Below are positions 11,305 to 44,636 of a DNA stretch of 64,000 bases, in pieces. Positions within the stretch are counted from its first letter, which is position 1; each line of letters opens with the position of its first letter. The DNA is taken from the IMG/VR virus record IMGVR_UViG_3300019458_000021, positions 173,380-237,379 of that record; one strand, given 5' to 3'. A program made the translations under genes and the position numbers. The notes under the pieces are model-generated. The model ran no database searches. It was not told where the DNA came from and saw nothing but the letters and a program-made list of their open reading frames with translations.

Positions 11305-11333
11305 TTGAGATTGTGACCGAGTTGTAGTATGAT
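11305..11333 (+). promoter_or_regulatory. sigma70-like promoter heading the radical SAM island
   Basis: TTGAGA-N17-TATGAT. Confidence 0.5.
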
Positions 11334-11353
11334 CGACAGACAAGGAAAAGGTA

Positions 11354-12529
11354 ATGACAGGAGCTGCAGTCTCATTCTACAAGCGATCTGACGCGGGTAC
11401 ATTGCGTAAGCATACACCGTCAGCATTCAAAACAGCTCCCCTTGCAATTGCTCCTCAGCTAATGCTGACAGAGCTAATGGTGTATTTGAAGACGACTGAA
11501 ACCTGTCAACTCAACTGCGCACACTGCTTCACCAACGGAATCAACGGACGAAAAATCTACTTCGATCCAGCTCGAACAATCGATTGGTTCCATCGTCTCC
11601 ATGCAGTAAATCCAACCCTGGCGGGAGGAAGTGTCGCTTTTCATGGTGGGGAGCCAATGCTTGCTCCAATCGCCGATATGCGTCGTACATGGGAAGCGTG
11701 CAAGGATTTGTGGCCAACAGTTTGGTGGACAACAACGACAAACCTTGTATACAAACTCGACGATGAAAAGCGCCTATTCTTCAAGGAATGCTTTACAGAC
11801 GGCATCTCAACTTCTTGGGACAAGAATATCCGATTTGATAACGAAAAACAGGAAGCTCTGTGGGCTAAAAACGTCCAAACACTTCTCGATGATGGGCATA
11901 AGATCACGCTTATGGTAAGCTTAAATCGTGCGATCACTGATATGAACCCGGAAGATTTCCTGCGTTGGGTTGGTGATATCGGCGTTCACTATTTGCATCT
12001 TGAACGAATCACCCCAAATGGTAACGCAACTCGCAACCCACACATCCTTCCTTCAAATAAAGAACTCGATGCTTGGATGCTGCGATTATGGGATGCAAGT
12101 TTGAAGCTTGGCACACATAAGTACTTTGCTAATCTGTTTTTGAACGGAATTTTGTCGAGCTTTGTGTCATTAACACATTCGGGTTGTCGTTGTCGAAGTT
12201 GCGAGAAGAAGATTTTCACCCTGAACGCAGATGGAACAATTGGCGGATGTCCAAACAGTGCAGTAGACAACACGTTCGGAACAATGGAAGATGATATTTT
12301 CTCGTTGCTTAGCAGCGAGGGGCGAATCGAAAACATTGCTTGTGAAACACAACGCAATCCGCTGTGCTACACGTGCGATGTTTATGACGTTTGCAACGGT
12401 GATTGTCACCAACTTGCATGGGAAGGCGACGTTTGTGCAAGTCCGAAATCGTTGATGCGTCGATTCAAAGCAGAGAACAATAGAGAACAGTATGAGATGT
12501 TCCTTAACGGGTTCATCGGCAAGGAGTAA
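11354..12529 (+). CDS. Radical SAM/SPASM enzyme 1
   Basis: CQLNCAHC, FHGGEP, TTTNL; C-terminal CRCRSC...GC...CYTCDVYDVCNGDC...C. Confidence 0.92.
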   Translation: MTGAAVSFYKRSDAGTLRKHTPSAFKTAPLAIAPQLMLTELMVYLKTTETCQLNCAHCFTNGINGRKIYFDPARTIDWFHRLHAVNPTLAGGSVAFHGGEPMLAPIADMRRTWEACKDLWPTVWWTTTTNLVYKLDDEKRLFFKECFTDGISTSWDKNIRFDNEKQEALWAKNVQTLLDDGHKITLMVSLNRAITDMNPEDFLRWVGDIGVHYLHLERITPNGNATRNPHILPSNKELDAWMLRLWDASLKLGTHKYFANLFLNGILSSFVSLTHSGCRCRSCEKKIFTLNADGTIGGCPNSAVDNTFGTMEDDIFSLLSSEGRIENIACETQRNPLCYTCDVYDVCNGDCHQLAWEGDVCASPKSLMRRFKAENNREQYEMFLNGFIGKE

Positions 12530-12531
12530 CT

Positions 12532-13185
12532 ATGGCTATCGCTGGCACAGACATCACGAAAGACAATATCACTGGATCAGGTGGCGTTGACTTGAACTCG
12601 TTCAAGCAACAAATCACCGACGTTGTCAACGCACTCACAAAAACAACAAGCGTGTCCGCAAACGGGACTGCACTAGGTCAAAAGCCATTTGGTAGTGGTG
12701 CACCAATTAGTGGATCGTTGTCAAGCACCAACTATGGTGGAACACCTCCTCTGTCTGCGCCACTTGTCGCTCCTGGCACGGTGACGAATTCACCACAAGC
12801 AAGTGACATTGCAGGTGCGAACATTGCAGCAGCCACTCTGATCACATTGTTCCAAAACACAGCTGTATTACTGTCCCGTGTTCGTCGCTATTCAATGGTA
12901 AAAACATACCTTAGTCCAGCGCCTGTTATCCAACTATCACTTACAGAACCAGGCCGCTATGGTTATCTGACAACAACGTACCAAGCAAATCCAGCAACAA
13001 CAACACCAGCAATCACGACATCTTTGGCAGCTCTTACTGGCGATATTAGTGCAGCAACGTTAAACACAGTAATTGACAACGTTGACACCGCAATTACGAA
13101 CCACAGAAACACAACCGTCGCGTTCACGGAAACGTGGTGTCACTCAAGCTGTCACAGCAGTCATAGTTCAAGGAACCGTCGCTAA
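12532..13185 (+). CDS. Thr/Ser/Ala-rich protein with C-terminal (C)HSS repeats; putative substrate of the island
   Basis: Ends TWCHSSCHSSHSSRNRR and lies immediately after rSAM 1. The ORF is solid; the function is inferred. Confidence 0.7.
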   Translation: MAIAGTDITKDNITGSGGVDLNSFKQQITDVVNALTKTTSVSANGTALGQKPFGSGAPISGSLSSTNYGGTPPLSAPLVAPGTVTNSPQASDIAGANIAAATLITLFQNTAVLLSRVRRYSMVKTYLSPAPVIQLSLTEPGRYGYLTTTYQANPATTTPAITTSLAALTGDISAATLNTVIDNVDTAITNHRNTTVAFTETWCHSSCHSSHSSRNRR

Positions 13186-13949
13186 TGACCACAGTTACAA
13201 CAGAACTTCCGCTTTCAATGGACGCCTTGCGTCAGGTAATTACACAACCAGATGCAGGAGTGGTTGTTGACTACAACAACAGTAACCTCAAAGGCCGTGC
13301 AGCGCTCATTTACATGACGAATACAAACTTACCAAATGTTGCTCTGAACATGACAGATGTGTCTCTCGAAGAGAAGTTTGTACTCGTTGACGACTACATC
13401 ACTCACAAGTCAATCCTGCATGTAGCACAACTAGTCAACACCGTTTTGAATGTGTTATTCGCCGTTCGGAAAGTTGACATTGGTGCTGAACAAGACATAT
13501 TGGATCAAGTGTCGCTATTTCCACAAGAACATGTCGGCGAATATCTTGCAAATCCAACACGAGCTGAACACATCAACAAGCTGATTGAACTTCTCGACAG
13601 TCTACCTCTGTACGCTGTAACGTGTTCAACATCATTCCGCGAAGTATACGGTAAAGGAAAAGAAGCGTTTGAGCCGGTTAACGACATTGATCATACTGGT
13701 TTCACATTCGTCCACCTGTTGACTCATCCGTTGTTCCTCGAATATTTCACACAACCAGCTACGACGACACTGAAGTATTACGTTCAGCAGTTCGACGAGT
13801 ACATGTATAACGGAAAATCGTTGTTTCCATTTTTGGTAAACTCGCCTGTATTCGGTATTCTTGAGTGTTACATCACAGGGGCGGTGGACCTTGATCAGCT
13901 GCTTACAGCACACTCAGAAATGAATGCTTTGGAAGGAGCTGCAGCCTAA
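13185..13949 (+). CDS. Hypothetical protein (rSAM island)
   Basis: 254-aa ORF with TAATG overlaps at both ends. Confidence 0.8.
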   Translation: MTTVTTELPLSMDALRQVITQPDAGVVVDYNNSNLKGRAALIYMTNTNLPNVALNMTDVSLEEKFVLVDDYITHKSILHVAQLVNTVLNVLFAVRKVDIGAEQDILDQVSLFPQEHVGEYLANPTRAEHINKLIELLDSLPLYAVTCSTSFREVYGKGKEAFEPVNDIDHTGFTFVHLLTHPLFLEYFTQPATTTLKYYVQQFDEYMYNGKSLFPFLVNSPVFGILECYITGAVDLDQLLTAHSEMNALEGAAA

Positions 13950-15052
13950 TGCTACACCTGTTCAACAAGATATACGTCAAGGGAGATCATCTTGTGAAAG
14001 GTTCGCGAGATGCAATTATCATCTCGCCGACCTATGGAAATGTTCCATTTTACACGACGAAATTCTCAACTCGGGCAAACAACGAAAAAACAGGCCAACT
14101 GTGCTATTCAGCAACGTCGCTCAAAGAACTGCTCGACACTCACTTTGGTGGATCTGATGCAAAATTCTTCAATTACCTCATGAAATGGCCTGCCGAGAAA
14201 CGATTAACGATCTACGCCGATCTTCCGACAATGGTTGATATTGCAACGAGATTCTTCAAAACAGTATTCCCAAAGATGACGGAAGACACATATGTTGTGG
14301 TGATGAAGTTACTGCTCTCCCGTATCAACTACTACCTAGGCGGAGCTGTTTTGCCATTCGTAACATTAACAGAGGACCAGGCAAATTCATACCGCGTCGA
14401 AACACTTCAAATTCTTGAAGATGTTGCTGGATTGCGCCATCGATTTCAAGAAACTGCACGCTGGCGCCTGACAAAAGTGGCACGTGACAGTATCATCCGC
14501 AACTGCAGCGTTGAATACCAATTGGCGACCTATCTAACAAATCCAAAATGGGCACATGCTCGTGCGTTTGAGAAAAAGGCTGTGTCAATGGCTAAGAAGC
14601 AAATCATTCACGAATATGCTCTAGAAATTAAAGGAGCTATTGTTCGGAACTTCATGAATCTTATCGTTCTTGAACCGACAGCAACGTTCAATTCTCTGAA
14701 AGATTCACTCGAGACGTTTGTTCAACAGTTCCCTCAGTATGCATTTGTTCTCGATGATGGATTTGTGCCAGACAATGCCGAGCATATCTGGCTTAAATAC
14801 AACATGGAGGATTTGAAAACAGTGTTTGATCGCGTGACACACAAGTTCGTGTTCATTGCACAGGACTACACACCTCTGTTGAAGAAATTGACGTTCGAAG
14901 ATGTGTTGAAGTATGAGCTGGACCGGCCATATCGCTGCTTTTTGTTCAATGGTGACAACTATCAGGAAACTGTCAACTCTTACTTGATTGACTATATCCT
15001 GAATGCTTATCGGATGAACCAACACGAACAAATTCGCCAGCTGGCACTGTAA
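13949..15052 (+). CDS. Hypothetical protein, paralog A
   Basis: MLHLFNKIYVK, DAIIISP, SVEYQLATYL, VNSYLID shared with the next gene. Confidence 0.8.
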   Translation: MLHLFNKIYVKGDHLVKGSRDAIIISPTYGNVPFYTTKFSTRANNEKTGQLCYSATSLKELLDTHFGGSDAKFFNYLMKWPAEKRLTIYADLPTMVDIATRFFKTVFPKMTEDTYVVVMKLLLSRINYYLGGAVLPFVTLTEDQANSYRVETLQILEDVAGLRHRFQETARWRLTKVARDSIIRNCSVEYQLATYLTNPKWAHARAFEKKAVSMAKKQIIHEYALEIKGAIVRNFMNLIVLEPTATFNSLKDSLETFVQQFPQYAFVLDDGFVPDNAEHIWLKYNMEDLKTVFDRVTHKFVFIAQDYTPLLKKLTFEDVLKYELDRPYRCFLFNGDNYQETVNSYLIDYILNAYRMNQHEQIRQLAL

Positions 15053-15061
15053 GGGAAAACA

Positions 15062-16132
15062 ATGTTACACCTACTAAACAAAGTCTACATTAAACCAGAC
15101 GCTGATTTCCAGCGAGGTCACGATGCAATTATCATCTCTCCGAAAACGAAGCTGTTTGACAGCGAACTTTTTGGTGTGGATGACATCGACTTTGGTAAGA
15201 TCCACTTCACCGCAGAAACATTCGATGCTCTTGTCGAGGTATTTGGAAGTGAAGACGCTTTTGTACAGTGGTTGGTTTATTTCGATCCGTCGACTCGTCT
15301 GGTTGTACATTGTGATCCAGCTACATTCGAGCACATTCTGGTTCGATGGCTTAAGACGATCCTTCCAAACATGGACGGTTCGAGTTTTCACAGTCTGATT
15401 CGCATAATTTACGCTCGATACGGTTACCAGTTTGGTTATCCGTACGTTCCATTTGTTCGCCTAACACCAGACGCTGCTGCTGTGTACAAGAGCTTCTTAG
15501 CTCGTATTCCTTCAAAGGAACAAGCGGTGCAGATGTGGAATCAGGCACAGCCATACACTGTGAATGTCGATTCTGCTGCTGTAAGTTTGGAATACCAACT
15601 CGCCACATACTTGGATGATCCGACTTGGGAACATACCGACCAGCTGAAAGCAAAAGTCATCACCATGGTCAAGAAGTTTCAAGTTGGTTCACTACTCGAT
15701 GTAAAAGAAGTCATGCTTGGGCACTTGTATATGTTACCAGACTTTGATCAGTTGAAAGATACACTGGTACACTATGTTACAGAACACCTCGAATACACAT
15801 TTTTGCTGGACATGAAACTGACCTCAGACGACTACACACGATTGTACGATCAATACAATACAGCTGTACTGCGTCAGATCTACATTGATTACTTCAAAAT
15901 GCATGCGGATATTTTTGACGAGACACAAGTTGAGAAAGATCACTTCCTCGATCCTGCAATCACATTTGAACAAATCATCGACAATGAGCTAGCTTCAATC
16001 GCTACGCGACAACTGCTTGGCTCGTGGGAATATGGCCTGACAGTCAACACTTACCTGCTAGACCACCTCTTTGCGCTCGAGAGAGCGAATGACCAGGCTG
16101 AGTTGAAGAAGTTCTCGCTCCTAAGGAGTTAG
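15062..16132 (+). CDS. Hypothetical protein, paralog B
   Basis: MLHLLNKVYIK, DAIIISP, SLEYQLATYL, VNTYLLD. Confidence 0.8.
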   Translation: MLHLLNKVYIKPDADFQRGHDAIIISPKTKLFDSELFGVDDIDFGKIHFTAETFDALVEVFGSEDAFVQWLVYFDPSTRLVVHCDPATFEHILVRWLKTILPNMDGSSFHSLIRIIYARYGYQFGYPYVPFVRLTPDAAAVYKSFLARIPSKEQAVQMWNQAQPYTVNVDSAAVSLEYQLATYLDDPTWEHTDQLKAKVITMVKKFQVGSLLDVKEVMLGHLYMLPDFDQLKDTLVHYVTEHLEYTFLLDMKLTSDDYTRLYDQYNTAVLRQIYIDYFKMHADIFDETQVEKDHFLDPAITFEQIIDNELASIATRQLLGSWEYGLTVNTYLLDHLFALERANDQAELKKFSLLRS

Positions 16133-16134
16133 CG

Positions 16135-17172
16135 ATGAGCATGGATTTCGTAATCGACTTCAACCTTGAGCTGTTACATGGTTGCAAGTGGAACTGCACT
16201 GGCTGCAATATTGGTAAGGAAGAACAAGACGGCTTTCTTGACGGCGATTTCGATCGTTTGATGCATTTGTTTGAGGATCTCGAGCGAAACTTTCACATCC
16301 TATCAAACGTTGCAATCACACCAACCGACTTCATTGTTTCGAACAACGCAGAGCAAATTTTCGTTCCAGAACTCAAGCTCATGCTTGACAAGTTCAAGGC
16401 GGTAACATTGAACACAACATTCCTGCACGATGATGACGTGCTGGAATACTGGGCAGCCAAACTACGACCGCTCCTCAAGGGCAATACTCTGAAGTTTAGT
16501 GTTCCTGTCGAACCAGATCACTATATGAACAAGAAGTACATGGCAAAGATCCTTCACAATCGTGACTACATAGTCAGTTTGCTTCCAGAAACGAAATACA
16601 CAAAGACGTACTTGATCGGCAATTTGTACGAGTACAAGAAGTTCGTCGACTTCGAATTCTACAGCGAAGACTTTCACGATAAGTGGGATGGACACCTCGA
16701 TTTGGTGATTACAGAGGGGCGTCTTAATTTGACGAATCCGTTCAACCGTCAGCGGTTGCGTCATATGATCGAATATCAGAACGATCTTTACAATCGCTCT
16801 GTTGAACACGATCACGGCAAAATCATCGTCAACTTCACGAATGGCAAACGTCACGAAGGCTATGATAAGGACTACGTGTACAAAAACGGTCGGATCTACG
16901 CACCAGTATTCGTTGGAGAACCGCTGGTCACGTTTGAGGAAGGCTACTATCTGGATCGATCAGTTGAGTGGAACACAGACAATCTCGTTGAGTTTGAGAA
17001 TCGAATGACCGTAGAAAGCTTTGAATATCTGCCACAAACACAACACTGTGCTACCTGCGAATTTGCGAATGCGTGTGTTGCTCGTGGTCTTACCAAGTTG
17101 ATGAAAACCTTGAAAGTTACGGACTGCTTGGCACCAAAGCCGGCTTTCACGTTCTTGAGGCAGGTTGCATGA
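16135..17172 (+). CDS. Divergent radical SAM-like protein 2
   Basis: CKWNCTGC and C-terminal CATCEFANAC...C; no GGE motif. Confidence 0.75.
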   Translation: MSMDFVIDFNLELLHGCKWNCTGCNIGKEEQDGFLDGDFDRLMHLFEDLERNFHILSNVAITPTDFIVSNNAEQIFVPELKLMLDKFKAVTLNTTFLHDDDVLEYWAAKLRPLLKGNTLKFSVPVEPDHYMNKKYMAKILHNRDYIVSLLPETKYTKTYLIGNLYEYKKFVDFEFYSEDFHDKWDGHLDLVITEGRLNLTNPFNRQRLRHMIEYQNDLYNRSVEHDHGKIIVNFTNGKRHEGYDKDYVYKNGRIYAPVFVGEPLVTFEEGYYLDRSVEWNTDNLVEFENRMTVESFEYLPQTQHCATCEFANACVARGLTKLMKTLKVTDCLAPKPAFTFLRQVA

Positions 17173-18311
17173 GTCCAATCAAATTCTACCGCACGAGACC
17201 TGAACTAGAGTTCGTGCCTGATAATCGGCACATGGAATTGATCATCAAGCCTACAGAGGCATGTAACTTCAAATGCACGTTCTGCTCGAGCACGAACATC
17301 ACAGACGAAAAAGCTAAAGTCCTCGACTTAGAGTCGATCTACGCCTTCCTCAAGCGGTTCCCCAACACACACTCAATCATTGTCAATGGTGGAGATCCAT
17401 TGATGGTCAAGCCATGGTATTACTGGGAGATCATCAAATACTGCGACGACAACAACTTGCCGACAAACCTTAGCTTCACCACGAACCTATGGGCATTCTA
17501 TAAGAAACCAGAGATGTGGGTAGACCTGTTCCGACACGATCGTGTCGGTGTCACAACGTCTTTTAACTACGGTAACACACGGCGAATTACAGATGATGAA
17601 GTATTCACAGAAGATATTTTCTGGAAGGTCAGCGATAAGGTGCTAGAGTATATTGGTTATCGACCAGATTTTATCTCAGTGATTACAGACGAGAACGAAG
17701 ATACGGCAATAGATAATGTTCGTCTTGCACAGGCTATGAGTGTCGAATGTAAGCTAAACTACGCAATGGCAAGCGGAATACAAAGTGCACCATATCAATT
17801 GTCAAAGATTTATCGCACATATACAGAGATCTATGAACTAGGACTCTGGCCGTGGGAATATAATACCAAGCAGATGATGCAACGTTTGGACGGCAAAGCA
17901 TCTAGCTGTCCACAACTACGTTCCTGTGATGAAGGCATTCGATGCTTACAACCAAGTGGTGATTATTACTCATGTGGCGCATTTGGTGATGATCGAGAAT
18001 ATCCAATCAACTTCCAACAAGAAGTGATTGAAGGTAAGTTCTTCACACCGCTTCAATCAGCACCAGAATTGCTGTCACTAAAAGAAGAATGTCACACATG
18101 TCCGATGTTCAAAATTTGCAATGGATGTCGTAAGACGATCACAGACATGAAACGTCATAATGTCGTTGAGGAACATTGCACATTGATGAAGACAATCGCG
18201 AAAAAGATCATCAATATCAATGACGAATCGGCTAACTTACTAATTGATCGCACGTTAAAGAAGGGAGCTCGCAAGTATGAGCCTTGTACACTAAATACCG
18301 TTCTCGCATAA
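17169..18311 (+). CDS. Radical SAM/SPASM enzyme 3
   Basis: IKPTEACNFKCTFC, NGGDP, FTTNL; CHTCPMFKICNGC. Confidence 0.92.
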   Translation: MSPIKFYRTRPELEFVPDNRHMELIIKPTEACNFKCTFCSSTNITDEKAKVLDLESIYAFLKRFPNTHSIIVNGGDPLMVKPWYYWEIIKYCDDNNLPTNLSFTTNLWAFYKKPEMWVDLFRHDRVGVTTSFNYGNTRRITDDEVFTEDIFWKVSDKVLEYIGYRPDFISVITDENEDTAIDNVRLAQAMSVECKLNYAMASGIQSAPYQLSKIYRTYTEIYELGLWPWEYNTKQMMQRLDGKASSCPQLRSCDEGIRCLQPSGDYYSCGAFGDDREYPINFQQEVIEGKFFTPLQSAPELLSLKEECHTCPMFKICNGCRKTITDMKRHNVVEEHCTLMKTIAKKIININDESANLLIDRTLKKGARKYEPCTLNTVLA

Positions 18312-18338
18312 ATGAGCGTCGAGCCTTGGAGGACTGAT

Positions 18339-18836
18339 ATGAAGCTAACAGAAAAACAGAAAGAGGTTCGGCGACGTTATTACAAAGAGAACAGAACTGA
18401 GATTCTGGAACATCAAAAGAACCGACGCACTGCCCAGAAAAAACACATTACACAGCTCGGAAAAACATGGCGTGAAAACAACAAAGACAAAACGAAGCGA
18501 TACGGGGAAAATCACTACAAGAATCACAAAGATGATTACACCACACGCTCCAGAAGGTGGCGCGAAAACAACCCCGAGCGTAAAATATTGGCCCGGCTGC
18601 GGGCAGGAGCGAAGAAAGAGCATATTCCATTCAATCTAGAGTTGGAAGACGTCAAGATACCGAATATATGTCCAGTTTTAGGCATTGCACTTGAAAGAGG
18701 AAGGGAAGCTTTTAAGAAACTACAATGTCCGTCGGCCGATCGAATTGTTCCAAAACTTGGATACGTTCGTGGTAATGTGCGATTTATAAGTCTTCGCGCC
18801 AACTTGATTAAATCGAACCGTCGGCTGAAGAACTGA
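18339..18836 (+). CDS. HNH-like homing endonuclease with probable C-terminal frameshift
   Basis: IPNICPVLG...PSADRIVPKLGYVRGNVRFISLRANLIKS; GGAGG RBS. Confidence 0.75.
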   Translation: MKLTEKQKEVRRRYYKENRTEILEHQKNRRTAQKKHITQLGKTWRENNKDKTKRYGENHYKNHKDDYTTRSRRWRENNPERKILARLRAGAKKEHIPFNLELEDVKIPNICPVLGIALERGREAFKKLQCPSADRIVPKLGYVRGNVRFISLRANLIKSNRRLKN

Positions 18837-18881
18837 TAAAAGTATACGAGTATATTGTACGAGAACGAGCGAGAATGACTG

Positions 18882-19979
18882 ATGAACCTTGCACAGCTAG
18901 TACTGCAACGCAAGCGTGATACCGATCAAGAATACACGATTCACTTGTTTGAGAAGTGCAATCTAACGTGTAATTTCTGTTGGCAAGATCACACTGCGAA
19001 TATTGGTCTGGATACTGTTCGACAAAAGATTCCAATCTTATGTGAGATGCTTGATGAAGATCCACATCACAAGTATACAATCAACATCATGGGTGGAGAG
19101 GTTTTTGCTGATGATATCTTCACGGAAAAGATGTGGGGGGATTACTACGCTCTATGCTGGTGGTCACATAAACATGTTGAGAAACTAGGGAAGGACATTA
19201 CGTTCAATTTCGTAACCAATCTCGTCACCACGAAGACAAAAGAAATTTTTGATTTGCTCCACGCATTGCGACGGGAAGGTGTTAAGGTTAAACTGACAAC
19301 GTCTTACGACGCAAAGGGTCGCTTCAATAAAGCTCAACTAGCAACGTTCAAAGAGAACATTGAAGTATTTCGTAATGAGCTTGAAGGAATCAGCATGTTG
19401 CTCACAAAGCCAGTAATCAAGCAGCTTGTTGAAGGAAAGGACGAATATTTCAAGTATCTGTACGACCAGGGGTTCTACATCTACTTCGACTACTATTCAC
19501 CAGAAGACGACTATCTGTTGGTCGGTCCATCTGATAAGGATCTGCTTAAGGCGTTCTACTTCCTGGTGGACAACTACCCGAATGTACATCCGATCAAAGA
19601 GTGGATTGAGAACCACACAAACTTCATGTCTTGTAGAAGCTCCAAACTGATCAACCCTGATGGTACGAAGTGCATGTGTGGGAATTTGCTGTTAGATAAT
19701 AAGCACGTTGTAACGTTCTTTAAGGCAAAGATACAAAAGGCTGACAACGATGAAATTGAGAACAATTTTTTGAACAGATGGGATTGTTTGTCGTGCGAAT
19801 ATTTCAGTCGTTGCACGTTGGGATGCTTCGTCCAACACGATTTCATGAAGCGCGGACAGATGAAAGAGTGCCCTTTCAAGCTGACTTTCGATAAAATCAC
19901 CAAGGGAACAGAAGTTGACATCGATCTCTTGGAAACATATTATGGGGAAGACCCTACAACTGACAATCGGGTACAGTGA
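18882..19979 (+). CDS. Radical SAM/SPASM enzyme 4
   Basis: CNLTCNFC, MGGE, FVTNL; CLSCEYFSRCTLGC...C. Confidence 0.9.
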   Translation: MNLAQLVLQRKRDTDQEYTIHLFEKCNLTCNFCWQDHTANIGLDTVRQKIPILCEMLDEDPHHKYTINIMGGEVFADDIFTEKMWGDYYALCWWSHKHVEKLGKDITFNFVTNLVTTKTKEIFDLLHALRREGVKVKLTTSYDAKGRFNKAQLATFKENIEVFRNELEGISMLLTKPVIKQLVEGKDEYFKYLYDQGFYIYFDYYSPEDDYLLVGPSDKDLLKAFYFLVDNYPNVHPIKEWIENHTNFMSCRSSKLINPDGTKCMCGNLLLDNKHVVTFFKAKIQKADNDEIENNFLNRWDCLSCEYFSRCTLGCFVQHDFMKRGQMKECPFKLTFDKITKGTEVDIDLLETYYGEDPTTDNRVQ

Positions 19980-20409
19980 TCTATATATTGCACAAGTACT
20001 CCAGCACAGTATTCGTCGTCGTGCATCAATTGGCACAGATTTTCGTTTTGTGTTGCGTGTGTCGAATGTAGTAGAATCACCGCTTCTGTGGAACTATGAG
20101 GGAGATTGGTCAATCTTCCTCGACGCGAAAATGCTTTGTTTGTGCGACATAAAGGAACTTACGGAACATTTCGACCCGCAATACGCCGTTCAGTTTGTTA
20201 AGTTCGCTGAACAACCATTGGCTGTAGTTGTATTCAATCACAACAAATTTGGCCGAACACCCGATCTCCATGACAAAGAAATTGGAGACCTGCCTTCAGA
20301 GTTTAACAGCGAATTCCCAACAGCAAAAATTCTTCGGTACGACAACGACCCATACAACTCTCAACTTTGGAAAGATGAACTCGATGACATGCTCCGAACT
20401 TACAGTTGA
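19942..20409 (+). CDS. Degenerate glycosyltransferase (GT-A/GT8-like) protein
   Basis: IGY...SIRRRAS...NYEGDWSIFLDAKML..CDIKEL resembles phage GT-A proteins; the DxD position reads DAK. Confidence 0.45.
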   Translation: MGKTLQLTIGYSDLYIAQVLQHSIRRRASIGTDFRFVLRVSNVVESPLLWNYEGDWSIFLDAKMLCLCDIKELTEHFDPQYAVQFVKFAEQPLAVVVFNHNKFGRTPDLHDKEIGDLPSEFNSEFPTAKILRYDNDPYNSQLWKDELDDMLRTYS

Positions 20410-21244
20410 GAACTTCATCTCCCAGCAATGGATCCATAAAAATCGCTACGTACTTAACGCAAGAACAGTGACACCTGAATGTGTTGAGTCCTTGAACGCA
20501 CAGGCATTCAAACGATTCCAGTTATCAAATCATCAACGCAAATACTCGAAGTCGCCAATTCGAATCGATATCTGTGAGTGGCTAGAACGTCGGGCGTCAT
20601 TCTCTCTACATGAATACGACTACACAATTCCACCAGGGTATGTAACGCCAATTGAGTTTTTTAGCGAGGCGCAGCCATGGCGAATGCTGTTGCTTTCTTT
20701 CGATCCATATGCGTCAATCCTGCAGCGAAAGCTGTTCACCGATGCACGATTCGTTGAACGTGCATACGAAGAAAAGGACGATATGTATTCACCGAAATCG
20801 TTCCTGTTGGAACAGATTGAACTTGGATGGCTTGGCTACAGCGAATTTGAAGACTGTATTTTCATTCACCACATACAAGTGCGAGGTGCACTCAAAGAAG
20901 GAATGCGATACAATGACCTTGTTTGGTTCTATAGATACTTGGTTCGTGCATTTACGCAGATGTTGCCCGAAGGGAAGTTGAAGCATGTGTACGCACCAGA
21001 TGCAGCAACGTTGTCGCTGTACAGCGAACGTCTGGTCGGGAATGCGTCAATAGTACTTCCGTATTCGCGGCATGTGCTACGAAAGAGCGACTTTCATACG
21101 GTTGGCTGGGACGCGTTTGCAACACAATCACCAATCGCGGCGGCTAAATGCAAGATGCGTGATGTGTTACTGCCAGACGAGATAACACTTTGGAGATACG
21201 ATTATAATGATCCACACACTTTGGCACGACAGAATTCTGATTGA
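20375..21244 (+). CDS. Hypothetical protein (rSAM island)
   Basis: Long ORF overlapping both neighbours; start uncertain. Confidence 0.7.
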   Translation: MNSMTCSELTVENFISQQWIHKNRYVLNARTVTPECVESLNAQAFKRFQLSNHQRKYSKSPIRIDICEWLERRASFSLHEYDYTIPPGYVTPIEFFSEAQPWRMLLLSFDPYASILQRKLFTDARFVERAYEEKDDMYSPKSFLLEQIELGWLGYSEFEDCIFIHHIQVRGALKEGMRYNDLVWFYRYLVRAFTQMLPEGKLKHVYAPDAATLSLYSERLVGNASIVLPYSRHVLRKSDFHTVGWDAFATQSPIAAAKCKMRDVLLPDEITLWRYDYNDPHTLARQNSD

Positions 21245-21809
21245 AGACGATTTGCTTGACCCGCAAGGCTGGAGTAATTTTCGAGACTGGGTCGGAGTGG
21301 AATTTGGTCGTCGACAGACAAAACCAATTATGTCAATCGACCATCTCAACTTGCCACCTGAACTCGGTTACTACGCAGCCATGCTTGACGGTGCCGTGAC
21401 AAACTATTGCGAAGCTTGTGGCATAGACTATGCAATGGATATTGTAAACCTACAGGCAACTTGGGTTGAGAATTACAACGAAACAAGTCACCATGAATTC
21501 GTACATGAACCACATCACGACCTTTCGGAAGGTGGCTATCTTGTTGCTGTGTATTATGTATGTACAGATGTGAATTCACTAACAAGATTTGTTGGGGGAG
21601 ACCTGGCGATATACAAGGCACTGACATATAGTGAATACCCCGAGGGAATGGTTCACGTTCGTGCAATACCGAACCGGTTGGTTGTTTTTCCTGCTATGCT
21701 TTACCATCGCATCAAACCATACTTCGGTCGTTCCCCACGAATTGCATTGTCGGCTGTGTTGTCTAAATCAGCCGACACAGTTCAAAACAAGAGAGTTTGC
21801 ACACTATGA
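21207..21809 (+). CDS. 2OG-Fe(II) oxygenase
   Basis: HHD...VYY...GGDL...NRLVVFPAMLYHRI...R (HxD...H...R). Confidence 0.85.
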   Translation: MIHTLWHDRILIEDDLLDPQGWSNFRDWVGVEFGRRQTKPIMSIDHLNLPPELGYYAAMLDGAVTNYCEACGIDYAMDIVNLQATWVENYNETSHHEFVHEPHHDLSEGGYLVAVYYVCTDVNSLTRFVGGDLAIYKALTYSEYPEGMVHVRAIPNRLVVFPAMLYHRIKPYFGRSPRIALSAVLSKSADTVQNKRVCTL

Positions 21810-22441
21810 ACTTCTACAAATTGTGGGCGTATCCAATTTACACATGCGAAAACGTTCTCCTCGACACCGAACGTCAGCAGGTGGCCGACTATGTGCTACA
21901 TCGATTCAAAGATCTGGACGACGACAAAATAGTCAACGTTCACGTTGCTGTTGATGGCGAGTTGGACAAAATTCCAAGCGATCTAAAGCTGTTGTATTAC
22001 GCATTGTATGTGAAGTTTTCTCAATATGTCTTCGAATGCGGAAATCCTCTTGAAGAGTACTTTCTTCACAGGATTGCTATGAATAAGACTCGCGCATTCG
22101 TTCCAGGACGAGACGAAGGTGTGATTTATGAATTGCACGCGGACGATAGCGTGAATGACATTACATGCGTCTACTACGCTCAAATCGATACAGTACACGC
22201 TAATGGTGGTAGTGCCGGCGGCGACCTGCGAATCTACAACCGAGCGGTGCTCGACACAACCGATGATACACGCGAAGCGTATGTCACTTGCAAACCAGTT
22301 GACAATAAAGCAGTAATGTTCCCGGGCAGTTTGATTCACGAGGTTCGTCCATATTTTGGTGAGCGTCCTCGAGTTAGTCTAAACTACAAGTTTCGTCGTT
22401 ACCGCAGGAACATCTCTTTGAAACCAAAGCTGGTAATATGA
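21806..22441 (+). CDS. 2OG-Fe(II) oxygenase
   Basis: HAD...VYY...GGDL...MFPGSLIHEV...RVS. Confidence 0.85.
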   Translation: MNFYKLWAYPIYTCENVLLDTERQQVADYVLHRFKDLDDDKIVNVHVAVDGELDKIPSDLKLLYYALYVKFSQYVFECGNPLEEYFLHRIAMNKTRAFVPGRDEGVIYELHADDSVNDITCVYYAQIDTVHANGGSAGGDLRIYNRAVLDTTDDTREAYVTCKPVDNKAVMFPGSLIHEVRPYFGERPRVSLNYKFRRYRRNISLKPKLVI

Positions 22442-23382
22442 AACCAGTCACTCTATCAATCAATCCACTGTATCTGTGCAACTTTCGGTGCAAGTTTTGT
22501 TATCTAACACCAGAACAACTTGCAGACAAGAAGAAAATCGATCATGTCCGTCTTGACCAAATGCTCTCTGAGGTCACAATGGTTACGGCAATCCAACACG
22601 TTGACTTGTACGGTGGAGAAATTGCACTGCTTTCCGATGAGTACTTTGATGATATGAAGCGGATCATCCGACAGTACTACTACAAGCCGATCAACGTTGT
22701 CACTAACCTGTCGAGAGTTCCGAAATTTTTCATGCCACCTGACATTCAATTGTCCGTGAGTTTTGATTTCGATTGTCGCGAACGGTACGAAGAAGTGTAC
22801 AGAAACATGGCAACTGTTCAGAAGCCGCTGCATGTTCTGGTTTTAGCTAGCAGGTGCTTAATCGACAAAGACGTCGACTACATGATTATGATGCTGAACA
22901 CATTACAAAATGTTCGGACAGTTGAGATCAAACCGTATAGCACGAATCAAGCAAACCAACATACCGTGTCGCACGCAGACTTCGAACGATTCGTTAAACG
23001 TTGGTTGACGAGTCGGATTCCAAAACGATTTGCGTTTATCAACGAGCAGAAGATTATCGAAGCGCTTCGCGGATCGTACAACGCATTTAGTGATGACCAT
23101 GTCTATATCACCCCTAATGGCAAGTTTGCGGTGCTTGATTTCGACGAGAGCGATCACGAGAAGTTCACAGAGCTCGACCACTTTGTGGACTATGTCCGGT
23201 GGACAGAACATGAGAAACAACTAATCGGAAGCAATTCATACTGCCAAACCTGTCCATATTTCGGTCACTGTTTGACAGAACACTATCGTTGGGTGAAAGA
23301 TCTCGAAAACTCGTGCAATGGTTACAGGTTCCTTTTGGATTGGTGCAATGAAAGAATGGAAAATCCGGCAGCAAATCTATGA
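22438..23382 (+). CDS. Radical SAM enzyme 5
   Basis: CNFRCKFCY, YGGE, VTNL; CQTCPYFGHC...C. Confidence 0.9.
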   Translation: MKPVTLSINPLYLCNFRCKFCYLTPEQLADKKKIDHVRLDQMLSEVTMVTAIQHVDLYGGEIALLSDEYFDDMKRIIRQYYYKPINVVTNLSRVPKFFMPPDIQLSVSFDFDCRERYEEVYRNMATVQKPLHVLVLASRCLIDKDVDYMIMMLNTLQNVRTVEIKPYSTNQANQHTVSHADFERFVKRWLTSRIPKRFAFINEQKIIEALRGSYNAFSDDHVYITPNGKFAVLDFDESDHEKFTELDHFVDYVRWTEHEKQLIGSNSYCQTCPYFGHCLTEHYRWVKDLENSCNGYRFLLDWCNERMENPAANL

Positions 23383-23776
23383 TCGTACGTGGCACGACCA
23401 CGATGACTTGGTCTGCCATTCAAAGATCATTGACACCAGTGAACTGGGATTTGATCCCAGCTTTGCAGGCAAAGTTGGTTCATATTTTATGTGGGAATGG
23501 GATGTTCTCGTCTATCCGGAGAAGTCGTATGCAGTTGCAATGGTTTACGCAAAACTGCTCGAGAAATACTTCGGTGAGAACTTCTATGAGGTGTTAGACG
23601 ATCAAGATTTGTTGCTTGGCGACAAGTACTTTGTTCGCTACAGCAAAAACAAAGAATGGTACGACAAGTTGATCGCAACTATGGACGAATGGAAATTGTG
23701 GGACTTTGAAAACAGCAAGTTACCGCAGGTTCAGGCGACCATCACGTACTTTAAGAAGGAGTTTCAGCTGATCTAA
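23348..23776 (+). CDS. Hypothetical protein (end of rSAM island)
   Basis: ORF overlapping rSAM 5. Confidence 0.7.
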   Translation: MKEWKIRQQIYDRTWHDHDDLVCHSKIIDTSELGFDPSFAGKVGSYFMWEWDVLVYPEKSYAVAMVYAKLLEKYFGENFYEVLDDQDLLLGDKYFVRYSKNKEWYDKLIATMDEWKLWDFENSKLPQVQATITYFKKEFQLI

Positions 23777-23818: not shown

Positions 23819-24397
23819 ATGAAACGCTGCACTTGCTCACTACACGAGGGAACAAATCCTCTCCCCATTTCATTCTTCACCAAAGACGCATCGACCTCTG
23901 ATAGCCTATCCCGACTGTGTCGACTTTGTTCTCAACGACGCTCCGCGGAAATACGAAATAGACGCAGAAAGAAACAACAAACGCTCACGAGAGAGCGATA
24001 CAAAAACGATCCAATGTTTCGAGCGAAAGCTTTGGCTAGCTCTCGGTCCTACCAGCGCAGAAGACTTGCTGAAGACCCTATGTATGCACACAAATTGGAG
24101 ATGTGGAGGAACGCACGATCGCGCGCTGTACGAAAAGGTCTAACATTCACAATAACAGTCGACGACATAAGCATCCCTCAGCGTTGCCCCATTCTTGATC
24201 TTCCGTTGACGCGAAATCAGGGCAGGCGAGGTCCAACGGAGGAATCTCCGACACTCGATAGAATTGATCCAAAGCACGGCTACGTTCCTGGAAATGTCAT
24301 CGTGATCAGCATGCGGGCGAACACCATCAAAAGTTTTGGTACGCCAGAAGAACACTTCAAGATTTACCGGTTTCTATCACAGTTGACTCAGAGATAA
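23819..24397 (+). CDS. HNH-like homing endonuclease
   Basis: N-terminal Cys knuckle; IPQRCPIL...PTLDRIDPKHGYVPGNVIVISMRANTIKS. Confidence 0.8.
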   Translation: MKRCTCSLHEGTNPLPISFFTKDASTSDSLSRLCRLCSQRRSAEIRNRRRKKQQTLTRERYKNDPMFRAKALASSRSYQRRRLAEDPMYAHKLEMWRNARSRAVRKGLTFTITVDDISIPQRCPILDLPLTRNQGRRGPTEESPTLDRIDPKHGYVPGNVIVISMRANTIKSFGTPEEHFKIYRFLSQLTQR

Positions 24398-33287: not shown

Positions 33288-33301
33288 ATTGTGTAGGCTG
33301 T

Positions 33302-36766: not shown

Positions 36767-36976
36767 ATGTGCGTTGTCAGTGTGATTACCGAATACGGTC
36801 GCGATAGAATGAGTGCTCCCTGGACGCCAGAACAGTTACAAGCATTCAAAGTTCTGATCGAGCAGGCGCAGAAATTTGACAAGTTAACCGATCAACCGAA
36901 CTGCGAGGATCCTGCAAAAGCTGTGTGGATTGCAGGTGTTGAAGAATCAGTTGGAGCCATCAAGAATGACGTTTGA
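36767..36976 (+). CDS. Hypothetical protein
   Basis: GGAGG RBS; MCVVS...A..FD..T.QP.CEDP.K. Confidence 0.6.
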   Translation: MCVVSVITEYGRDRMSAPWTPEQLQAFKVLIEQAQKFDKLTDQPNCEDPAKAVWIAGVEESVGAIKNDV

Positions 36977-44559: not shown

Positions 44560-44636
44560 TGGTCGGAGTGGCAGGATTTGAACCCGCGTCTTCCACGTCC
44601 CAAACGTGGCCGTCTACCAGACTGGCTTACACTCCG
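44560..44636 (-). tRNA. tRNA-Pro(UGG) #1
   Basis: CGGAGTG acceptor, ccacg-TT TGG GA-cgtgg anticodon arm, TTCAAAT T-loop, encoded CCA. Confidence 0.93.

What the first reader, a model, noticed from the sequence alone, without database searches (positions are those of the whole stretch)
11305..23776. Phage-encoded RiPP-like modification island: five radical SAM/SPASM enzymes, two 2OG oxygenases and a candidate substrate, set among tail genes
Seen: a co-oriented, tightly coupled run of genes with five CxxxCxxC proteins carrying Cys-rich C-terminal domains, two HxD...H oxygenases, a paralog pair and other unknowns. It lies between two paralogous virion genes (10064 and 24423). Known: SPASM rSAM enzymes typically crosslink or modify peptides/proteins, and 2OG oxygenases are common RiPP tailoring enzymes. 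Inferred: the phage heavily modifies one of its own proteins, possibly a virion component, or releases a modified peptide. I saw no protease or exporter in the island, which favours a modified protein that stays intact.
Basis: partly seen in the sequence, partly recalled or inferred. Interest (0 to 1): 0.93.

Follow-up and report, generated by a model that had tools for sequence, protein, structure and literature searches.

The report
Phage radical-SAM island modifying a virion protein
A large phage carries a widespread but unstudied set of radical-SAM and oxygenase enzymes that most likely modify a conserved 16-residue Cys-His-Ser tail on one of its own small particle proteins, which would be a new kind of virion chemistry.

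Summary
Window 11354-23776 is a co-oriented, overlapping run of genes. It holds five CxxxCxxC proteins: three have the full SPASM cysteine pattern and two have a shorter four-Cys end. It also holds two 2OG oxygenases, a paralog pair, several new families and two inserted HNH endonucleases, and it lies between two paralogous fibre-like genes.

The island is a conserved phage module. It occurs in cultured jumbo phages (RSF1, RSL2, Atu_ph07, Phosso, pPa_SNUABM_DT01), and the best-conserved enzyme has 339 relatives in IMG/VR.

The proposed substrate (12532-13185) is supported. Its body diverges to about 20-30% identity, yet its end is almost invariant: C-H-x-S-C-H-x-S-C-H-x-S-R-G-R-R-stop. It lies next to the first enzyme in nearly every locus. 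The R-x-R-R end occurs only where rD and rE are present (38/38 against 0/7).

The Atu_ph07 ortholog (gp170) was found in purified virions, peaking at the top of the gel. One relative carries a fibre-type Peptidase_S74 chaperone domain after the motif.

The enzymes are closest to anaerobic sulfatase maturase and peptide-crosslinking SPASM maturases, not to QueE, MoaA or NrdG. The actual chemistry is not shown. I found no functional description in the searchable literature.

The parts
10064..11302 (+). Fibre-like virion gene on the upstream flank; paralog of 24423-26708
   Evidence: Paralogy shown. Matches virion and tail-fibre PHROGs. The N-terminal domain is shared with Atu_ph07 gp176, which was detected in virions. 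The same family flanks the module in L023, L037, L063, L003 and L002.
11354..12529 (+). rA: radical SAM/SPASM enzyme, directly upstream of the substrate gene in most loci; core of the module
   Evidence: CxxxCxxC at residue 51 plus the full SPASM Cys pattern. NCBIfam full-length matches to anSME, DynA and DarE, all far below their cut-offs. The family profile matches anSME 4k37 at E 3.9e-10. Orthologs share 35-55% identity across loci.
12532..13185 (+). S*: 217-aa candidate substrate, a small fibre-like virion protein with a divergent body and a conserved C-terminal tail
   Evidence: Alignments. Present in essentially every homologous island. The Atu_ph07 ortholog gp170 is in the virion proteome. 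The L011 relative carries Peptidase_S74 after the motif. The AF2 model is poor (pLDDT 56).
13138..13182 (+). The modification tail itself (residues 203-217: CHSS CHSS -HSS RNRR); the family consensus is (C-H-x-S)x3-R-G-R-R followed by stop
   Evidence: All invariant columns of the family lie here. Forty-five distinct tails use both synonymous codons for Cys and His, and both TCN and AGY for the invariant Ser. The window copy alone lacks the third Cys.
13185..13949 (+). u: universal non-enzymatic partner of the long S* forms (chaperone or adaptor); no structural relative found
   Evidence: Directly downstream of S* in 40 of 47 loci. Absent where S* is short. Confident AF2 model (pLDDT 86.7, pTM 0.82) with no PDB fold match and only uncharacterised phage orthologs in BFVD. 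No PDB sequence match. Atu_ph07 gp169 is not in the virion list.
13949..15052 (+). p1: accessory protein of unknown function, paralog of p2
   Evidence: 28% identity to p2. Matches phrog_36207, unknown function. Present in a subset of loci. No PDB match beyond weak helical-repeat hits.
15062..16132 (+). p2: paralog of p1
16135..17172 (+). rB: divergent CxxxCxxC protein, a putative radical SAM enzyme with one auxiliary-cluster motif; accessory
   Evidence: Invariant G-C-x3-C-x-G-C and C-terminal Cx2Cx5C...C across 10 homologs. No Pfam, NCBIfam or PDB match. hhalign to rC matches only the cluster motif (probability 26%). Occurs as arrays of 2-5 copies beside short S* genes in other loci.
17169..18311 (+). 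rC: best-conserved radical SAM/SPASM enzyme; core of the module
   Evidence: PF04055 at 36.4 bits, above cut-off. Full SPASM pattern. Profile matches anSME 4k36 over its full length, E 8e-8. 53-71% identity to homologs in cultured jumbo phages and IMG/VR, where it has 339 relatives.
18312..18836 (+). HNH/endonuclease VII-like homing endonuclease inserted in the operon; not part of the pathway
   Evidence: phrog_3322 at E 7e-27. Paralog of 23819-24397. No counterpart at this position in other loci.
18882..19979 (+). rD: radical SAM/SPASM enzyme; part of the accessory set tied to the R-x-R-R tail
   Evidence: CxxxCxxC plus the full SPASM pattern. Weak NCBIfam matches to QhpD and PapB. Co-occurs with rE in 38 of 38 loci with an R-x-R-R tail and in 0 of 7 without.
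19942..20409 (+). x: lineage-specific ORF of unknown function (start uncertain)
   Evidence: No family match. One weak 55-aa match in other loci.
20375..21244 (+). y: lineage-specific ORF of unknown function (start uncertain)
   Evidence: No family match. No homolog in other loci.
21207..21809 (+). o1: 2OG-Fe(II) oxygenase-like protein
   Evidence: PF13759 at 21.8 bits, below cut-off. phrog_81 2OG-Fe(II) oxygenase, E 2e-10. Paralog of o2. Contains H-x-D.
21797..22441 (+). o2: 2OG-Fe(II) oxygenase
   Evidence: PF13640 at 32 bits and PF13759 at 28.6 bits, both above cut-off. HAD at residue 114.
22438..23382 (+). rE: radical SAM enzyme with a short four-Cys C-terminal motif; tied to the R-x-R-R tail
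   Evidence: PF04055 at 26.4 bits, just below cut-off. phrog_1802 at E 1.5e-35. Cx2Cx5C pattern. Co-variation with the tail.
23348..23776 (+). z: small, highly conserved protein always directly after rE; possible partner of rE (the ORF opens at 23318; the family consensus starts at 23348)
   Evidence: Mean column identity 46%, with 17 invariant residues. phrog_20737, unknown function. No PDB or NCBIfam match. Never found without rE.
23819..24397 (+). Second HNH/endonuclease VII-like homing endonuclease, at the island's downstream edge
   Evidence: phrog_3322 at E 4.5e-32. Paralog of 18312-18836.
24423..26708 (+). Fibre-like virion gene on the downstream flank; paralog of 10064-11302
   Evidence: 53% identity to the gene in the same position in L023.

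Best explanation
The island is a conserved phage operon that modifies the C-terminal tail of a small fibre-like virion protein after translation. That protein is S* (12532-13185).

**Shown:**
- S* sits beside the radical SAM/SPASM enzyme rA in nearly all related islands.
- Its body is free to diverge, but its last 16 residues, (Cys-His-x-Ser)x3-Arg-Gly-Arg-Arg, are held by selection at the protein level.
- The enzyme set changes with the tail. A minimal set (rA, u, rC) goes with tails that end right after the third repeat. rD, rE and z appear only with the R-x-R-R extension.
- The S* ortholog of Atu_ph07 is in purified virions and the enzymes are not.

**Inferred:**
- rA and rC are anSME-like SPASM enzymes. 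They abstract hydrogen from residues of the CHxS repeats and install covalent changes, one unit per repeat.
- The most likely changes are intra- or inter-chain crosslinks (Cys thioethers, or three-residue His-to-Ser rings), or oxidation of Cys/Ser to an aldehyde.
- rD, rE and z act on, or dock to, the Arg-rich end.
- rB, the two 2OG oxygenases and p1/p2 add lineage-specific decoration.
- u is a non-catalytic chaperone or adaptor for the folded N-terminal part of S*.
- The modified protein is not cleaved or exported. It is assembled, probably as a trimer, into the tail-fibre apparatus. There the modified tip would give covalent stability or a special receptor- or metal-binding surface.
For: **Synteny.** The module is shared across cultured jumbo phages of different lineages and about 60 non-redundant IMG/VR loci.

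**Tail conservation.** Body identity is about 20-30%, yet every invariant column lies in the tail.

**Selection on the protein.** Across 45 distinct tails, Cys and His use both synonymous codons. The invariant Ser uses both TCN and AGY.

**Linkage.** S* is directly upstream of u in 40 of 47 loci and elsewhere in the locus in the others.

**Tail and enzyme co-variation.** The split is 38/38 against 0/7, Fisher p 2e-8, not corrected for phylogeny.

**Repeat number varies.** L011 has four repeats and L016 has an expanded repeat run, as expected for independent modification units.

**Enzyme affinities.** The closest relatives are protein- and peptide-modifying SPASM enzymes.

**Virion evidence.** Atu_ph07 gp170 (31.9 kDa, identity checked by mass) gave 8 peptides at 35% coverage. 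It was most abundant in gel band 1, whereas other 30-kDa proteins peak in band 8 (PMC6102473 Table S5).

**Fibre character.**
- L011 S* carries Peptidase_S74 right after the motif (E 1.5e-11).
- The island lies among fibre genes here and in five other lineages.
- Pelagimyophage work places radical SAM cassettes in the host-recognition cluster next to tail fibres (PMC7029224).

**No processing machinery.** No protease or exporter was found in the island.
Against: - No modification has been observed. The published proteome does not report the C-terminal peptide.
- The top-of-gel migration of gp170 could be ordinary SDS-resistant trimerisation, as in many fibres.
- All enzyme matches to named families are far below family cut-offs, so the chemistry cannot be read from homology.
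- rB is a radical SAM enzyme by motif only.
- The window's S* lacks the third Cys, so this copy may be partly degenerate.
- The tail/enzyme co-variation rests on perhaps two or three independent evolutionary events.
- The AF2 model of S* is poor, and no fibre fold could be shown for the window's own copy.
Confidence: 0.68

Rival explanations
1. S* is a long-leader precursor. Its modified C-terminal 12-16 residues are cut off and released as a small peptide, or as a peptide-derived cofactor in the manner of PQQ or mycofactocin.
For: A conserved short C-terminal core next to SPASM enzymes is the classic layout of RiPP and peptide-derived cofactor pathways. rC matches the mycofactocin maturase model weakly over its full length. 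Short S* forms of 104-128 aa exist.
Against: No protease, peptidase or transporter is in the island or is conserved in related islands. The 'leader' is a 100-320 aa protein with conserved motifs of its own. The Atu_ph07 ortholog is a virion protein. In L011 the motif is internal and is followed by a fibre chaperone domain.
Confidence: 0.1
2. The Cys-His tail is an unmodified metal-binding or Fe-S-binding site. It would be a structural metal site at a trimeric fibre tip, or a cluster carrier serving the many Fe-S enzymes. The radical SAM enzymes would act on another target: a neighbouring fibre protein, DNA or a metabolite.
For: Three Cys and three His within 12 residues is a plausible metal site. 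From my own knowledge, trimeric phage fibres such as T4 gp37 bind metal through His repeats. Marine T4-like genomes rich in radical SAM genes also carry Fe-S assembly genes (PMC5332604). The window encodes a superoxide dismutase.
Against: - The invariant Ser and the strict four-residue spacing are not explained by metal binding alone.
- The make-up of the tail co-varies with the enzyme set.
- S* keeps its place beside rA through gene-order rearrangements.
- The enzymes resemble protein and peptide maturases.
Confidence: 0.1
3. The matured S* is a phage counterpart of the bacterial HXS effector. [quoted passage not shown] Possible roles are superinfection exclusion, a decoy against host HXS defence, or an aid to the phage's own DNA delivery, rather than a structural fibre tip.
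For: The bacterial HxsA effector has five HxS repeats rich in basic residues. It is matured by two radical SAM enzymes plus a small partner protein, gains +8 Da on an S-H-R-S-S unit, and blocks phage DNA entry (PMC13128918). S* has three H-x-S units followed by R-G-R-R, several radical SAM enzymes and small partner proteins (u, z). HXS is 99.7% Pseudomonadota, the same phylum as the hosts of the cultured phages that carry the island.
Against: - No model-level homology: S* does not match the HxsA model. HxsC is matched only over the cluster-binding region, at 32.7 bits against a cut-off of 268. There is no HxsB or HxsD match.
- S* has Cys in every repeat, no evident signal peptide and no peptidoglycan-binding domain.
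- Its context is fibre genes.
Confidence: 0.1

Closest known systems
HXS antiphage system (HxsA/B/C/D; Li et al., Nat Commun 2026, PMC13128918)
   Same: In both, a protein rather than a short peptide carries tandem His-x-Ser units with basic residues. It is matured by more than one radical SAM enzyme together with a small partner protein, and the product acts as an intact protein. The biology is phage-bacterium conflict in Pseudomonadota.
   Different: - This system is phage-encoded and virion-associated.
- Every repeat has a Cys (C-H-x-S), and the repeats sit at the extreme C-terminus with an R-G-R-R end.
- It has 2-6 or more SPASM-type enzymes plus oxygenases.
- There is no signal peptide and no peptidoglycan-binding domain.
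- No HMM-level membership in any Hxs family.
Anaerobic sulfatase-maturating enzyme (anSME; PDB 4k36-4k39)
   Same: It is the best solved-structure relative of rA and rC over their full length. It is a SPASM enzyme that acts on Cys or Ser of a whole protein substrate which stays intact.
   Different: Scores are far below the family cut-off (42 against 349 bits). From my own knowledge, the sulfatase target motif is C/S-x-P/A-x-R, and that motif is absent from S*. Here several different enzymes converge on one tail.
SPASM peptide crosslinkers: DynA/DarE (dynobactin, darobactin), three-residue cyclophane enzymes (XyeB, YhhB, GrrM) and PapB/CteB thioether synthases
   Same: These are the top NCBIfam full-length matches for rA and rC. 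Their substrates carry short repeated 3-4 residue units near the C-terminus. His-containing crosslinks made by radical SAM enzymes are known in dynobactin, bicyclostreptin and His-type triceptides (PMC10206099). H-x-S fits the aromatic-x-x unit of triceptides.
   Different: All scores lie 10-20 fold below the cut-offs. Those products are small exported peptides with leader removal. Here the 'leader' is a folded virion protein and no protease or exporter is present.
QhpD/QhpC (maturation of the quinohemoprotein amine dehydrogenase gamma subunit)
   Same: From my own knowledge, a SPASM enzyme installs several Cys thioether crosslinks in a small protein that remains a structural subunit. rD matches the QhpD model weakly (E 6e-6).
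   Different: The match covers only the N-terminal region and is far below cut-off. The substrate motif is different, and QhpD/QhpC is a cellular enzyme subunit, not a virion protein.
Trimeric tail fibres and spikes with a C-terminal intramolecular chaperone (Peptidase_S74)
   Same: The L011 member of the S* family has this domain directly after the CHxS repeats. S* lies among fibre genes, and its Atu_ph07 ortholog runs at the top of the gel like other fibre proteins.
   Different: The window's S* has no S74 domain and no recognisable fibre domain. No known fibre is processed by radical SAM enzymes.

Membership tests
Radical SAM superfamily (PF04055) | N-terminal CxxxCxxC motif that binds the SAM-cleaving [4Fe-4S] cluster | tested here: met
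   Present in all five proteins, at residues 51, 17, 32, 26 and 14. Invariant in the family alignments of rA, rB and rC.
Radical SAM superfamily (PF04055) | Profile score above Pfam's gathering cut-off (29.5 bits) | tested here: inconclusive
   rC scores 36.4 (met). rE scores 26.4, rD 19.7 and rA 17.9 (all below). rB has no match. rA, rC, rD and rE all match phrog_1802, radical SAM, at E 1e-35 to 2e-57. rB matches only an unknown-function PHROG and shows 26% hhalign probability to rC.
SPASM domain (TIGR04085) | Seven-Cys pattern for two auxiliary clusters (C-x9-15-G-x4-C ... Cx2Cx5Cx3C ... C), with a profile score of at least 27 bits | tested here: inconclusive
   The pattern is present in rA, rC and rD. 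rB and rE have only Cx2Cx5C plus 1-2 further Cys. Profile scores are 23.7 (rA), 26.5 (rC) and 17.5 (rD), all just under the cut-off.
Anaerobic sulfatase maturase (TIGR03942) | Equivalog score of at least 349 bits, and a substrate with the sulfatase C/S-x-P/A-x-R motif | tested here: not met
   rA scores 42 bits and rC 36.9 bits. No such motif is conserved in S*: the third unit reads C-H-x-x-R, with G, S, N or A rather than P or A at the key position.
HXS system (HxsA, HxsB, HxsC, HxsD) | Tandem His-x-Ser repeats in the effector | tested here: met
   There are three H-x-S units in the S* tail. They are embedded as C-H-x-S.
HXS system (HxsA, HxsB, HxsC, HxsD) | Membership of the four NCBIfam families; effector with N-terminal processing signal and peptidoglycan-binding domain | tested here: not met
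   S*, u and z match no Hxs model. HxsC is matched by rC at 32.7 bits against a cut-off of 267.9, over the cluster region only. There is no HxsB match. S* contains no Pfam domain.
RiPP pathway (ribosomal peptide natural product) | Gene-encoded precursor with a conserved core next to its modifying enzymes | tested here: met
RiPP pathway (ribosomal peptide natural product) | Leader removal by a protease, and export of a small product | tested here: not met
   No protease or transporter is in the island or conserved in relatives. The ortholog is detected in virions as a protein.
Three-residue cyclophane (triceptide) maturases (XyeB, YhhB, GrrM) | Equivalog-level score, and a substrate with aromatic-x-x units that become cyclophanes | tested here: inconclusive
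   H-x-S fits the unit formally. Enzyme scores are 23.3 (YhhB, cut-off 445), 17-23 (XyeB, cut-off 450) and 15.6 (GrrM, cut-off 310). The crosslink itself cannot be tested with these tools.
Tail fibre or spike with intramolecular chaperone (PF13884 Peptidase_S74) | S74 domain at the C-terminus | tested here: not met
   Absent from the window's S*. Present in the L011 family member at 44.8 bits against a cut-off of 22.
2OG-Fe(II) oxygenase (PF13640/PF13759) | Profile above cut-off, and an H-x-D...H iron triad | tested here: met
   o2 scores 32 and 28.6 bits against a cut-off of 27, with H-A-D at residue 114. o1 scores 21.8 (below cut-off), is a paralog, and has H-H-D at residue 103.

The most novel reading that the evidence does not exclude
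Tailed phages of many lineages use a portable 16-residue tag, (C-H-x-S)x3-R-G-R-R. A dedicated battery of 2 to more than 6 radical SAM enzymes turns the end of small virion proteins into a covalently crosslinked structure, possibly one that binds metal. This would be the first RiPP-type radical chemistry built into a virus particle. Because it mirrors the bacterial HXS effector (an rSAM-matured HxS repeat that blocks DNA entry), the tag may be the viral side of the same conflict at the cell envelope.
Probability: 0.3. Interest if true: 0.92.

Novelty: new variant of a known kind. Interest (0 to 1): 0.84.

Why it matters
**New enzymology.** Radical SAM/SPASM maturases are known for small exported peptides, a few cellular enzymes and, since 2026, one bacterial defence effector. 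A widespread viral module that aims up to half a dozen such enzymes at one short tail of a particle protein would open new ground. It brings a new substrate motif, at least four unknown protein families (u, p, z, rB) and several enzymes converging on 16 residues.

**Virion biology.** It would also be a new way for phages to build or tune their host-recognition apparatus.

**Old puzzles.** It could explain why jumbo phages and marine T4-like phages carry so many radical SAM and 2OG oxygenase genes next to their tail fibres.

**Directly testable.** The module is present in cultured phages (Atu_ph07, RSF1, pPa_SNUABM_DT01), and the substrate is small.

Tried and rejected
**Searches that found nothing useful**
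- A near-identity DNA search of the island against 50,697 phage records found nothing.
- A tblastn search with S* found nothing, because only the tail is conserved.
- Profile searches of u, p, z and rB against PDB sequences gave no meaningful match.
- The AF2 model of S* was too poor to interpret (pLDDT 56), and its Foldseek matches were noise.
- The confident model of u has no PDB fold neighbour.
- Pfam scans of ten further S* proteins found no domain.
- The S* motif scan of 185,579 species genomes gave one hit, on a Bdellovibrio MAG contig that carries the whole module and looks like phage DNA. The system therefore appears restricted to phages.

**Leads that turned out to be unrelated or uninformative**
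- Promoter and terminator scans were at background level. The sigma-70-like site at 11305-11333 is not evidence of function.
- The RP12/RP31 radical SAM cluster in PMC5468394 is a different cluster.
- The cyanophage 'maturase' in PMC12801897 is unrelated.
- A sixth CxxxCxxC at 33278 lies upstream of any start codon and was rejected as chance.

**Functions considered and rejected for the radical SAM enzymes**
- Viperin, QueE, NrdG and MoaA roles were rejected. Those matches cover only the cluster-binding N-terminus and score lower than the full-length SPASM maturase matches.

Full report
**What is in the window**

The window is part of a large tailed phage. It carries T4-type replication genes: a helicase at 1400-2995 and a clamp loader at 6637-7566. 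One of its proteins is about 39% identical to proteins of Stenotrophomonas and Xanthomonas jumbo phages. The same sequence occurs in two IMG/VR contigs of 193 and 237 kb.

From 11354 to 23776 every gene is on the + strand, and neighbouring genes are separated by -38 to +51 nt. The gene order is:

| Gene | Coordinates | Description |
|---|---|---|
| rA | 11354-12529 | CxxxCxxC enzyme |
| S* | 12532-13185 | 217 aa, candidate substrate |
| u | 13185-13949 | unknown, universal partner |
| p1, p2 | 13949-15052, 15062-16132 | paralog pair |
| rB | 16135-17172 | divergent CxxxCxxC protein |
| rC | 17169-18311 | CxxxCxxC enzyme |
| HNH | 18312-18836 | endonuclease |
| rD | 18882-19979 | CxxxCxxC enzyme |
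| x, y | 19942-21244 | two ORFs with no relatives |
| o1, o2 | 21207-21809, 21797-22441 | 2OG oxygenases |
| rE | 22438-23382 | CxxxCxxC enzyme |
| z | 23348-23776 | small conserved protein |
| HNH | 23819-24397 | second endonuclease |

The flanks, 10064-11302 and 24423-26708, are paralogs with tail-fibre and virion PHROG matches. Further fibre genes follow: 26718-31052 and the RCC1-repeat protein at 31062-33287.

**Check of the observation**

All five CxxxCxxC motifs are real, and they are the only ones inside genes in the 64 kb window.
- rA, rC and rD have the full SPASM cysteine pattern. rB and rE have a shorter Cx2Cx5C...C end.
- HMM support is weak but consistent. Only rC passes Pfam's Radical_SAM cut-off. 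rA, rD and rE fall below it but match the phage radical SAM family phrog_1802 at E 1e-35 to 2e-57.
- rB matches no described family and is a radical SAM candidate on invariant motifs alone.
- One oxygenase passes its cut-off, and the other is its paralog.
- The two HNH genes are paralogs with no counterparts in related islands, so I treat them as mobile inserts.

**The island is a conserved module**

rC has homologs at 53-61% identity in several cultured jumbo phages:
- Ralstonia phages RSF1, RSL2 and RsoM3USA
- Burkholderia phages FLC6 and SURPRISE13
- Agrobacterium phage Atu_ph07
- Sinorhizobium phage Phosso
- Pseudomonas phage pPa_SNUABM_DT01

In the four records I opened, the neighbours are orthologs of rA, S*, u, p, rB, rD, rE and z in nearly the same order. 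These phages belong to unrelated lineages: one is phiKZ-like and another is T4/Rak2-like.

A scan of IMG/VR with the rC profile found 339 relatives. I fetched the best 80 loci. A scan with the S* tail found 15 loci. Four layouts recur:
1. rA-S*-u-(p)-rD-(rB)-rC-rE-z, the layout of the window.
2. A minimal rA-S*-u-rC.
3. rA-rC-rE-z-rD, plus an opposite-strand array of four or five rB paralogs ending in one or two short S* genes of 104-128 aa.
4. S*-S*-rB-rB-rA-rC-rE-z-rD.

Relatives add other protein-modifying enzymes:
- a cupin upstream of rA, which is absent from the window
- a B12-binding radical SAM enzyme
- an Asp/Asn beta-hydroxylase-like oxygenase

**The substrate**

S* proteins are only about 20-30% identical to one another overall, and their length ranges from 104 to 318 aa. 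Every invariant column nevertheless lies in the last 16 residues. The consensus is C-H-x-S-C-H-x-(S/N)-C-H-x-(S/A/N)-R-G-R-R followed by the stop codon.

Selection acts on the protein, not the DNA. Among 45 distinct tail sequences, both codons for Cys and for His are used about equally. The Ser at position 4 is invariant while using both TCN and AGY codons.

Linkage is tight. S* lies directly upstream of u in 40 of 47 distinct loci, often with overlapping stop and start codons. In the other seven it is elsewhere in the locus or the contig is cut.

Other variation in the family:
- The repeat number varies: four units in L011 and an expanded run of repeats in L016.
- One variant replaces a His with Phe (L035).
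- The window's copy reads CHSS-CHSS-HSS-RNRR and is the only one seen without the third Cys. Both metagenome contigs agree on this.

Among 185,579 species genomes the motif search found one locus, a MAG contig that carries the whole module. The system therefore looks specific to phages.

**Tail and enzymes co-vary**

All 38 non-redundant loci whose S* ends in R-x-R-R contain both rD and rE, and nearly always z. All 7 loci whose S* ends directly after the third repeat, or continues into another domain, contain only rA, u and rC. This holds even though 7-11 kb of DNA downstream was examined. Fisher p is 2e-8, not corrected for relatedness. At least two lineages are involved.

The gene u is present with every long S* and absent with the short ones.

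This suggests a division of labour:
- rA and rC work on the CHxS repeats.
- rD, rE and z are tied to the Arg-rich end.
- u serves the N-terminal body.
- rB arrays go with the short S* forms.

**Fate of the product**

The Atu_ph07 paper reports a virion proteome (PMC6102473, Supplementary Table S5).
- gp170 is the S* ortholog. Its predicted mass of 31.89 kDa matches my calculation.
- It was identified with 8 peptides at 35% coverage, in gel bands 1-9, and was most abundant in band 1. That band is where a 127 kDa protein runs. Other proteins of about 30 kDa peak in band 8.
- gp176 shares the N-terminal domain of the window's flanking genes and is also virion-associated.
- The enzymes (gp165, gp168, gp171) and gp169 (u) are not listed.

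In L011 the CHxS repeats are followed by a Peptidase_S74 intramolecular chaperone domain (E 1.5e-11, above cut-off). This domain is typical of trimeric fibres and spikes.

The module is flanked by members of the same fibre-like family in five other lineages. Earlier work on pelagimyophages noted radical SAM cassettes inside the host-recognition cluster next to tail fibres, without assigning a function (PMC7029224). No protease or exporter was found.

**What the enzymes resemble**

Profiles of rA and rC match anaerobic sulfatase-maturating enzyme over their full length (E 4e-10 and 8e-8). CteB and other peptide maturases follow. MoaA and lysine aminomutase match only the N-terminal cluster region.

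NCBIfam gives the same picture. The full-length matches are anSME, DynA, DarE, DarW, PapB, YhhB, CbpB and MftC. The matches to viperin, NrdG, MoaA and QueE are N-terminal only. Every score is far below the family cut-off.

The enzymes are therefore SPASM protein/peptide maturases of no described family. Radical SAM enzymes are known to make His-containing crosslinks in dynobactin, bicyclostreptin and His-type triceptides (PMC10206099), so a His-x-Ser ring is chemically plausible. Cys thioethers and Cys/Ser oxidation are equally plausible.

The proteins u, p and z have no sequence relatives in the PDB. The model of u is confident (pLDDT 86.7) but has no fold neighbour among solved structures, only uncharacterised phage orthologs.

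**Comparison with what is known**

The closest described system in logic is the bacterial HXS defence system (PMC13128918).
- Its effector protein has five His-x-Ser repeats rich in basic residues.
- It is matured by two radical SAM enzymes and a small partner protein, gains +8 Da on an S-H-R-S-S unit, and blocks phage DNA entry.
- S* shares the H-x-S units, the basic end, the multiple radical SAM enzymes and the small partners.
- However, no component reaches membership of any Hxs family, every S* repeat has a Cys, and S* sits in a virion context.

Papers on RSF1-like phages list the radical SAM, cupin and oxygenase genes as accessory genes of unknown role. I found no paper that links them to a substrate or describes the tail. 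The searchable library does not cover most subscription journals.

**Verdict**

- Its interpretation is supported as far as sequence analysis and one published proteome can take it: a phage that modifies one of its own proteins, probably a virion component that stays intact.
- The actual modification is not shown.
- I rate this a new variant of a known kind, namely radical SAM/SPASM maturation of a gene-encoded substrate. Its features are unusual: it is viral, it targets a particle protein, many enzymes converge on one 16-residue tag, and several families are new.

Noticed in passing
window 36930-37568 (+): The phage encodes an Fe/Mn superoxide dismutase, with both Pfam domains (E 4e-35 and 5e-22). 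It could protect the many oxygen-sensitive Fe-S enzymes of the island, but that link is only a guess.
   Followed up: no
window 41210-42256 (-): A FolE2-type GTP cyclohydrolase I (PF02649, E 1e-50). A UDG-superfamily protein (40021-40662) and a GNAT acetyltransferase (39602-40195) lie next to it. I did not check whether this belongs to a nucleotide or DNA-modification pathway.
   Followed up: partly
window 42256-43971 (-): A P-loop protein that matches terminase-large-subunit, primase and helicase-loader PHROGs. It carries a LAGLIDADG domain at residues 236-289, which suggests an intein or an inserted homing endonuclease.
   Followed up: no
window 18312-18836 and 23819-24397 (+): Two paralogous HNH/endonuclease VII-like genes (45% identity over 74 aa) sit inside and at the edge of the island. 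They have no counterparts in related islands and are probably homing endonucleases.
   Followed up: partly
window 44560-44636, 46997-47073 and 47302-47375 (-): Two tRNA-Pro(TGG) genes and one tRNA-Ala(TGC) gene.
   Followed up: no
window 60001-64000: GC content rises to 0.52-0.56, against about 0.45 elsewhere. The ORFs there have no Pfam match. This may be a region of different origin.
   Followed up: partly
window 31062-33287 (+): A 741-aa protein made almost entirely of RCC1 repeats (11 repeats, E 1e-109) lies among the fibre genes, directly after the 1444-aa fibre protein.
   Followed up: no
window 33278-33301 (+): A sixth CxxxCxxC (CNLNCVGC) lies between a stop codon and the first start codon of ORF 33302-34372. 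It is a chance match, not a sixth radical SAM gene.
   Followed up: yes
L011:9839-10786: This S* family member has four CHxS units followed by a Peptidase_S74 intramolecular chaperone domain instead of the R-G-R-R stop. Its island has only rA, u and rC.
   Followed up: yes
L016:9860-10543: In this S* the CHxS units are expanded into a long run of repeats interrupted by N-V-(P)-V spacers, before the usual R-G-R-R end.
   Followed up: partly
L081, L082, L090, L045, L060: These IMG/VR contigs carry arrays of two to five rB paralogs next to one or two short, Tyr/Asn/Ser-rich S* proteins of 104-128 aa. They lack the u gene.
   Followed up: partly
L007:13253-14944, L009:14148-16082 and L015:6506-8422: Some related islands add a B12-binding radical SAM enzyme (KedN5-like C-methyltransferase family, E 1e-23). 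The window has none.
   Followed up: partly
window 11305-11333 (+): A sigma-70-like site (TTGAGA, 17 nt spacer, TATGAT) lies just upstream of rA and coincides with the start coordinate of the finding. Such sites are no more frequent in the region than in shuffled sequence.
   Followed up: yes
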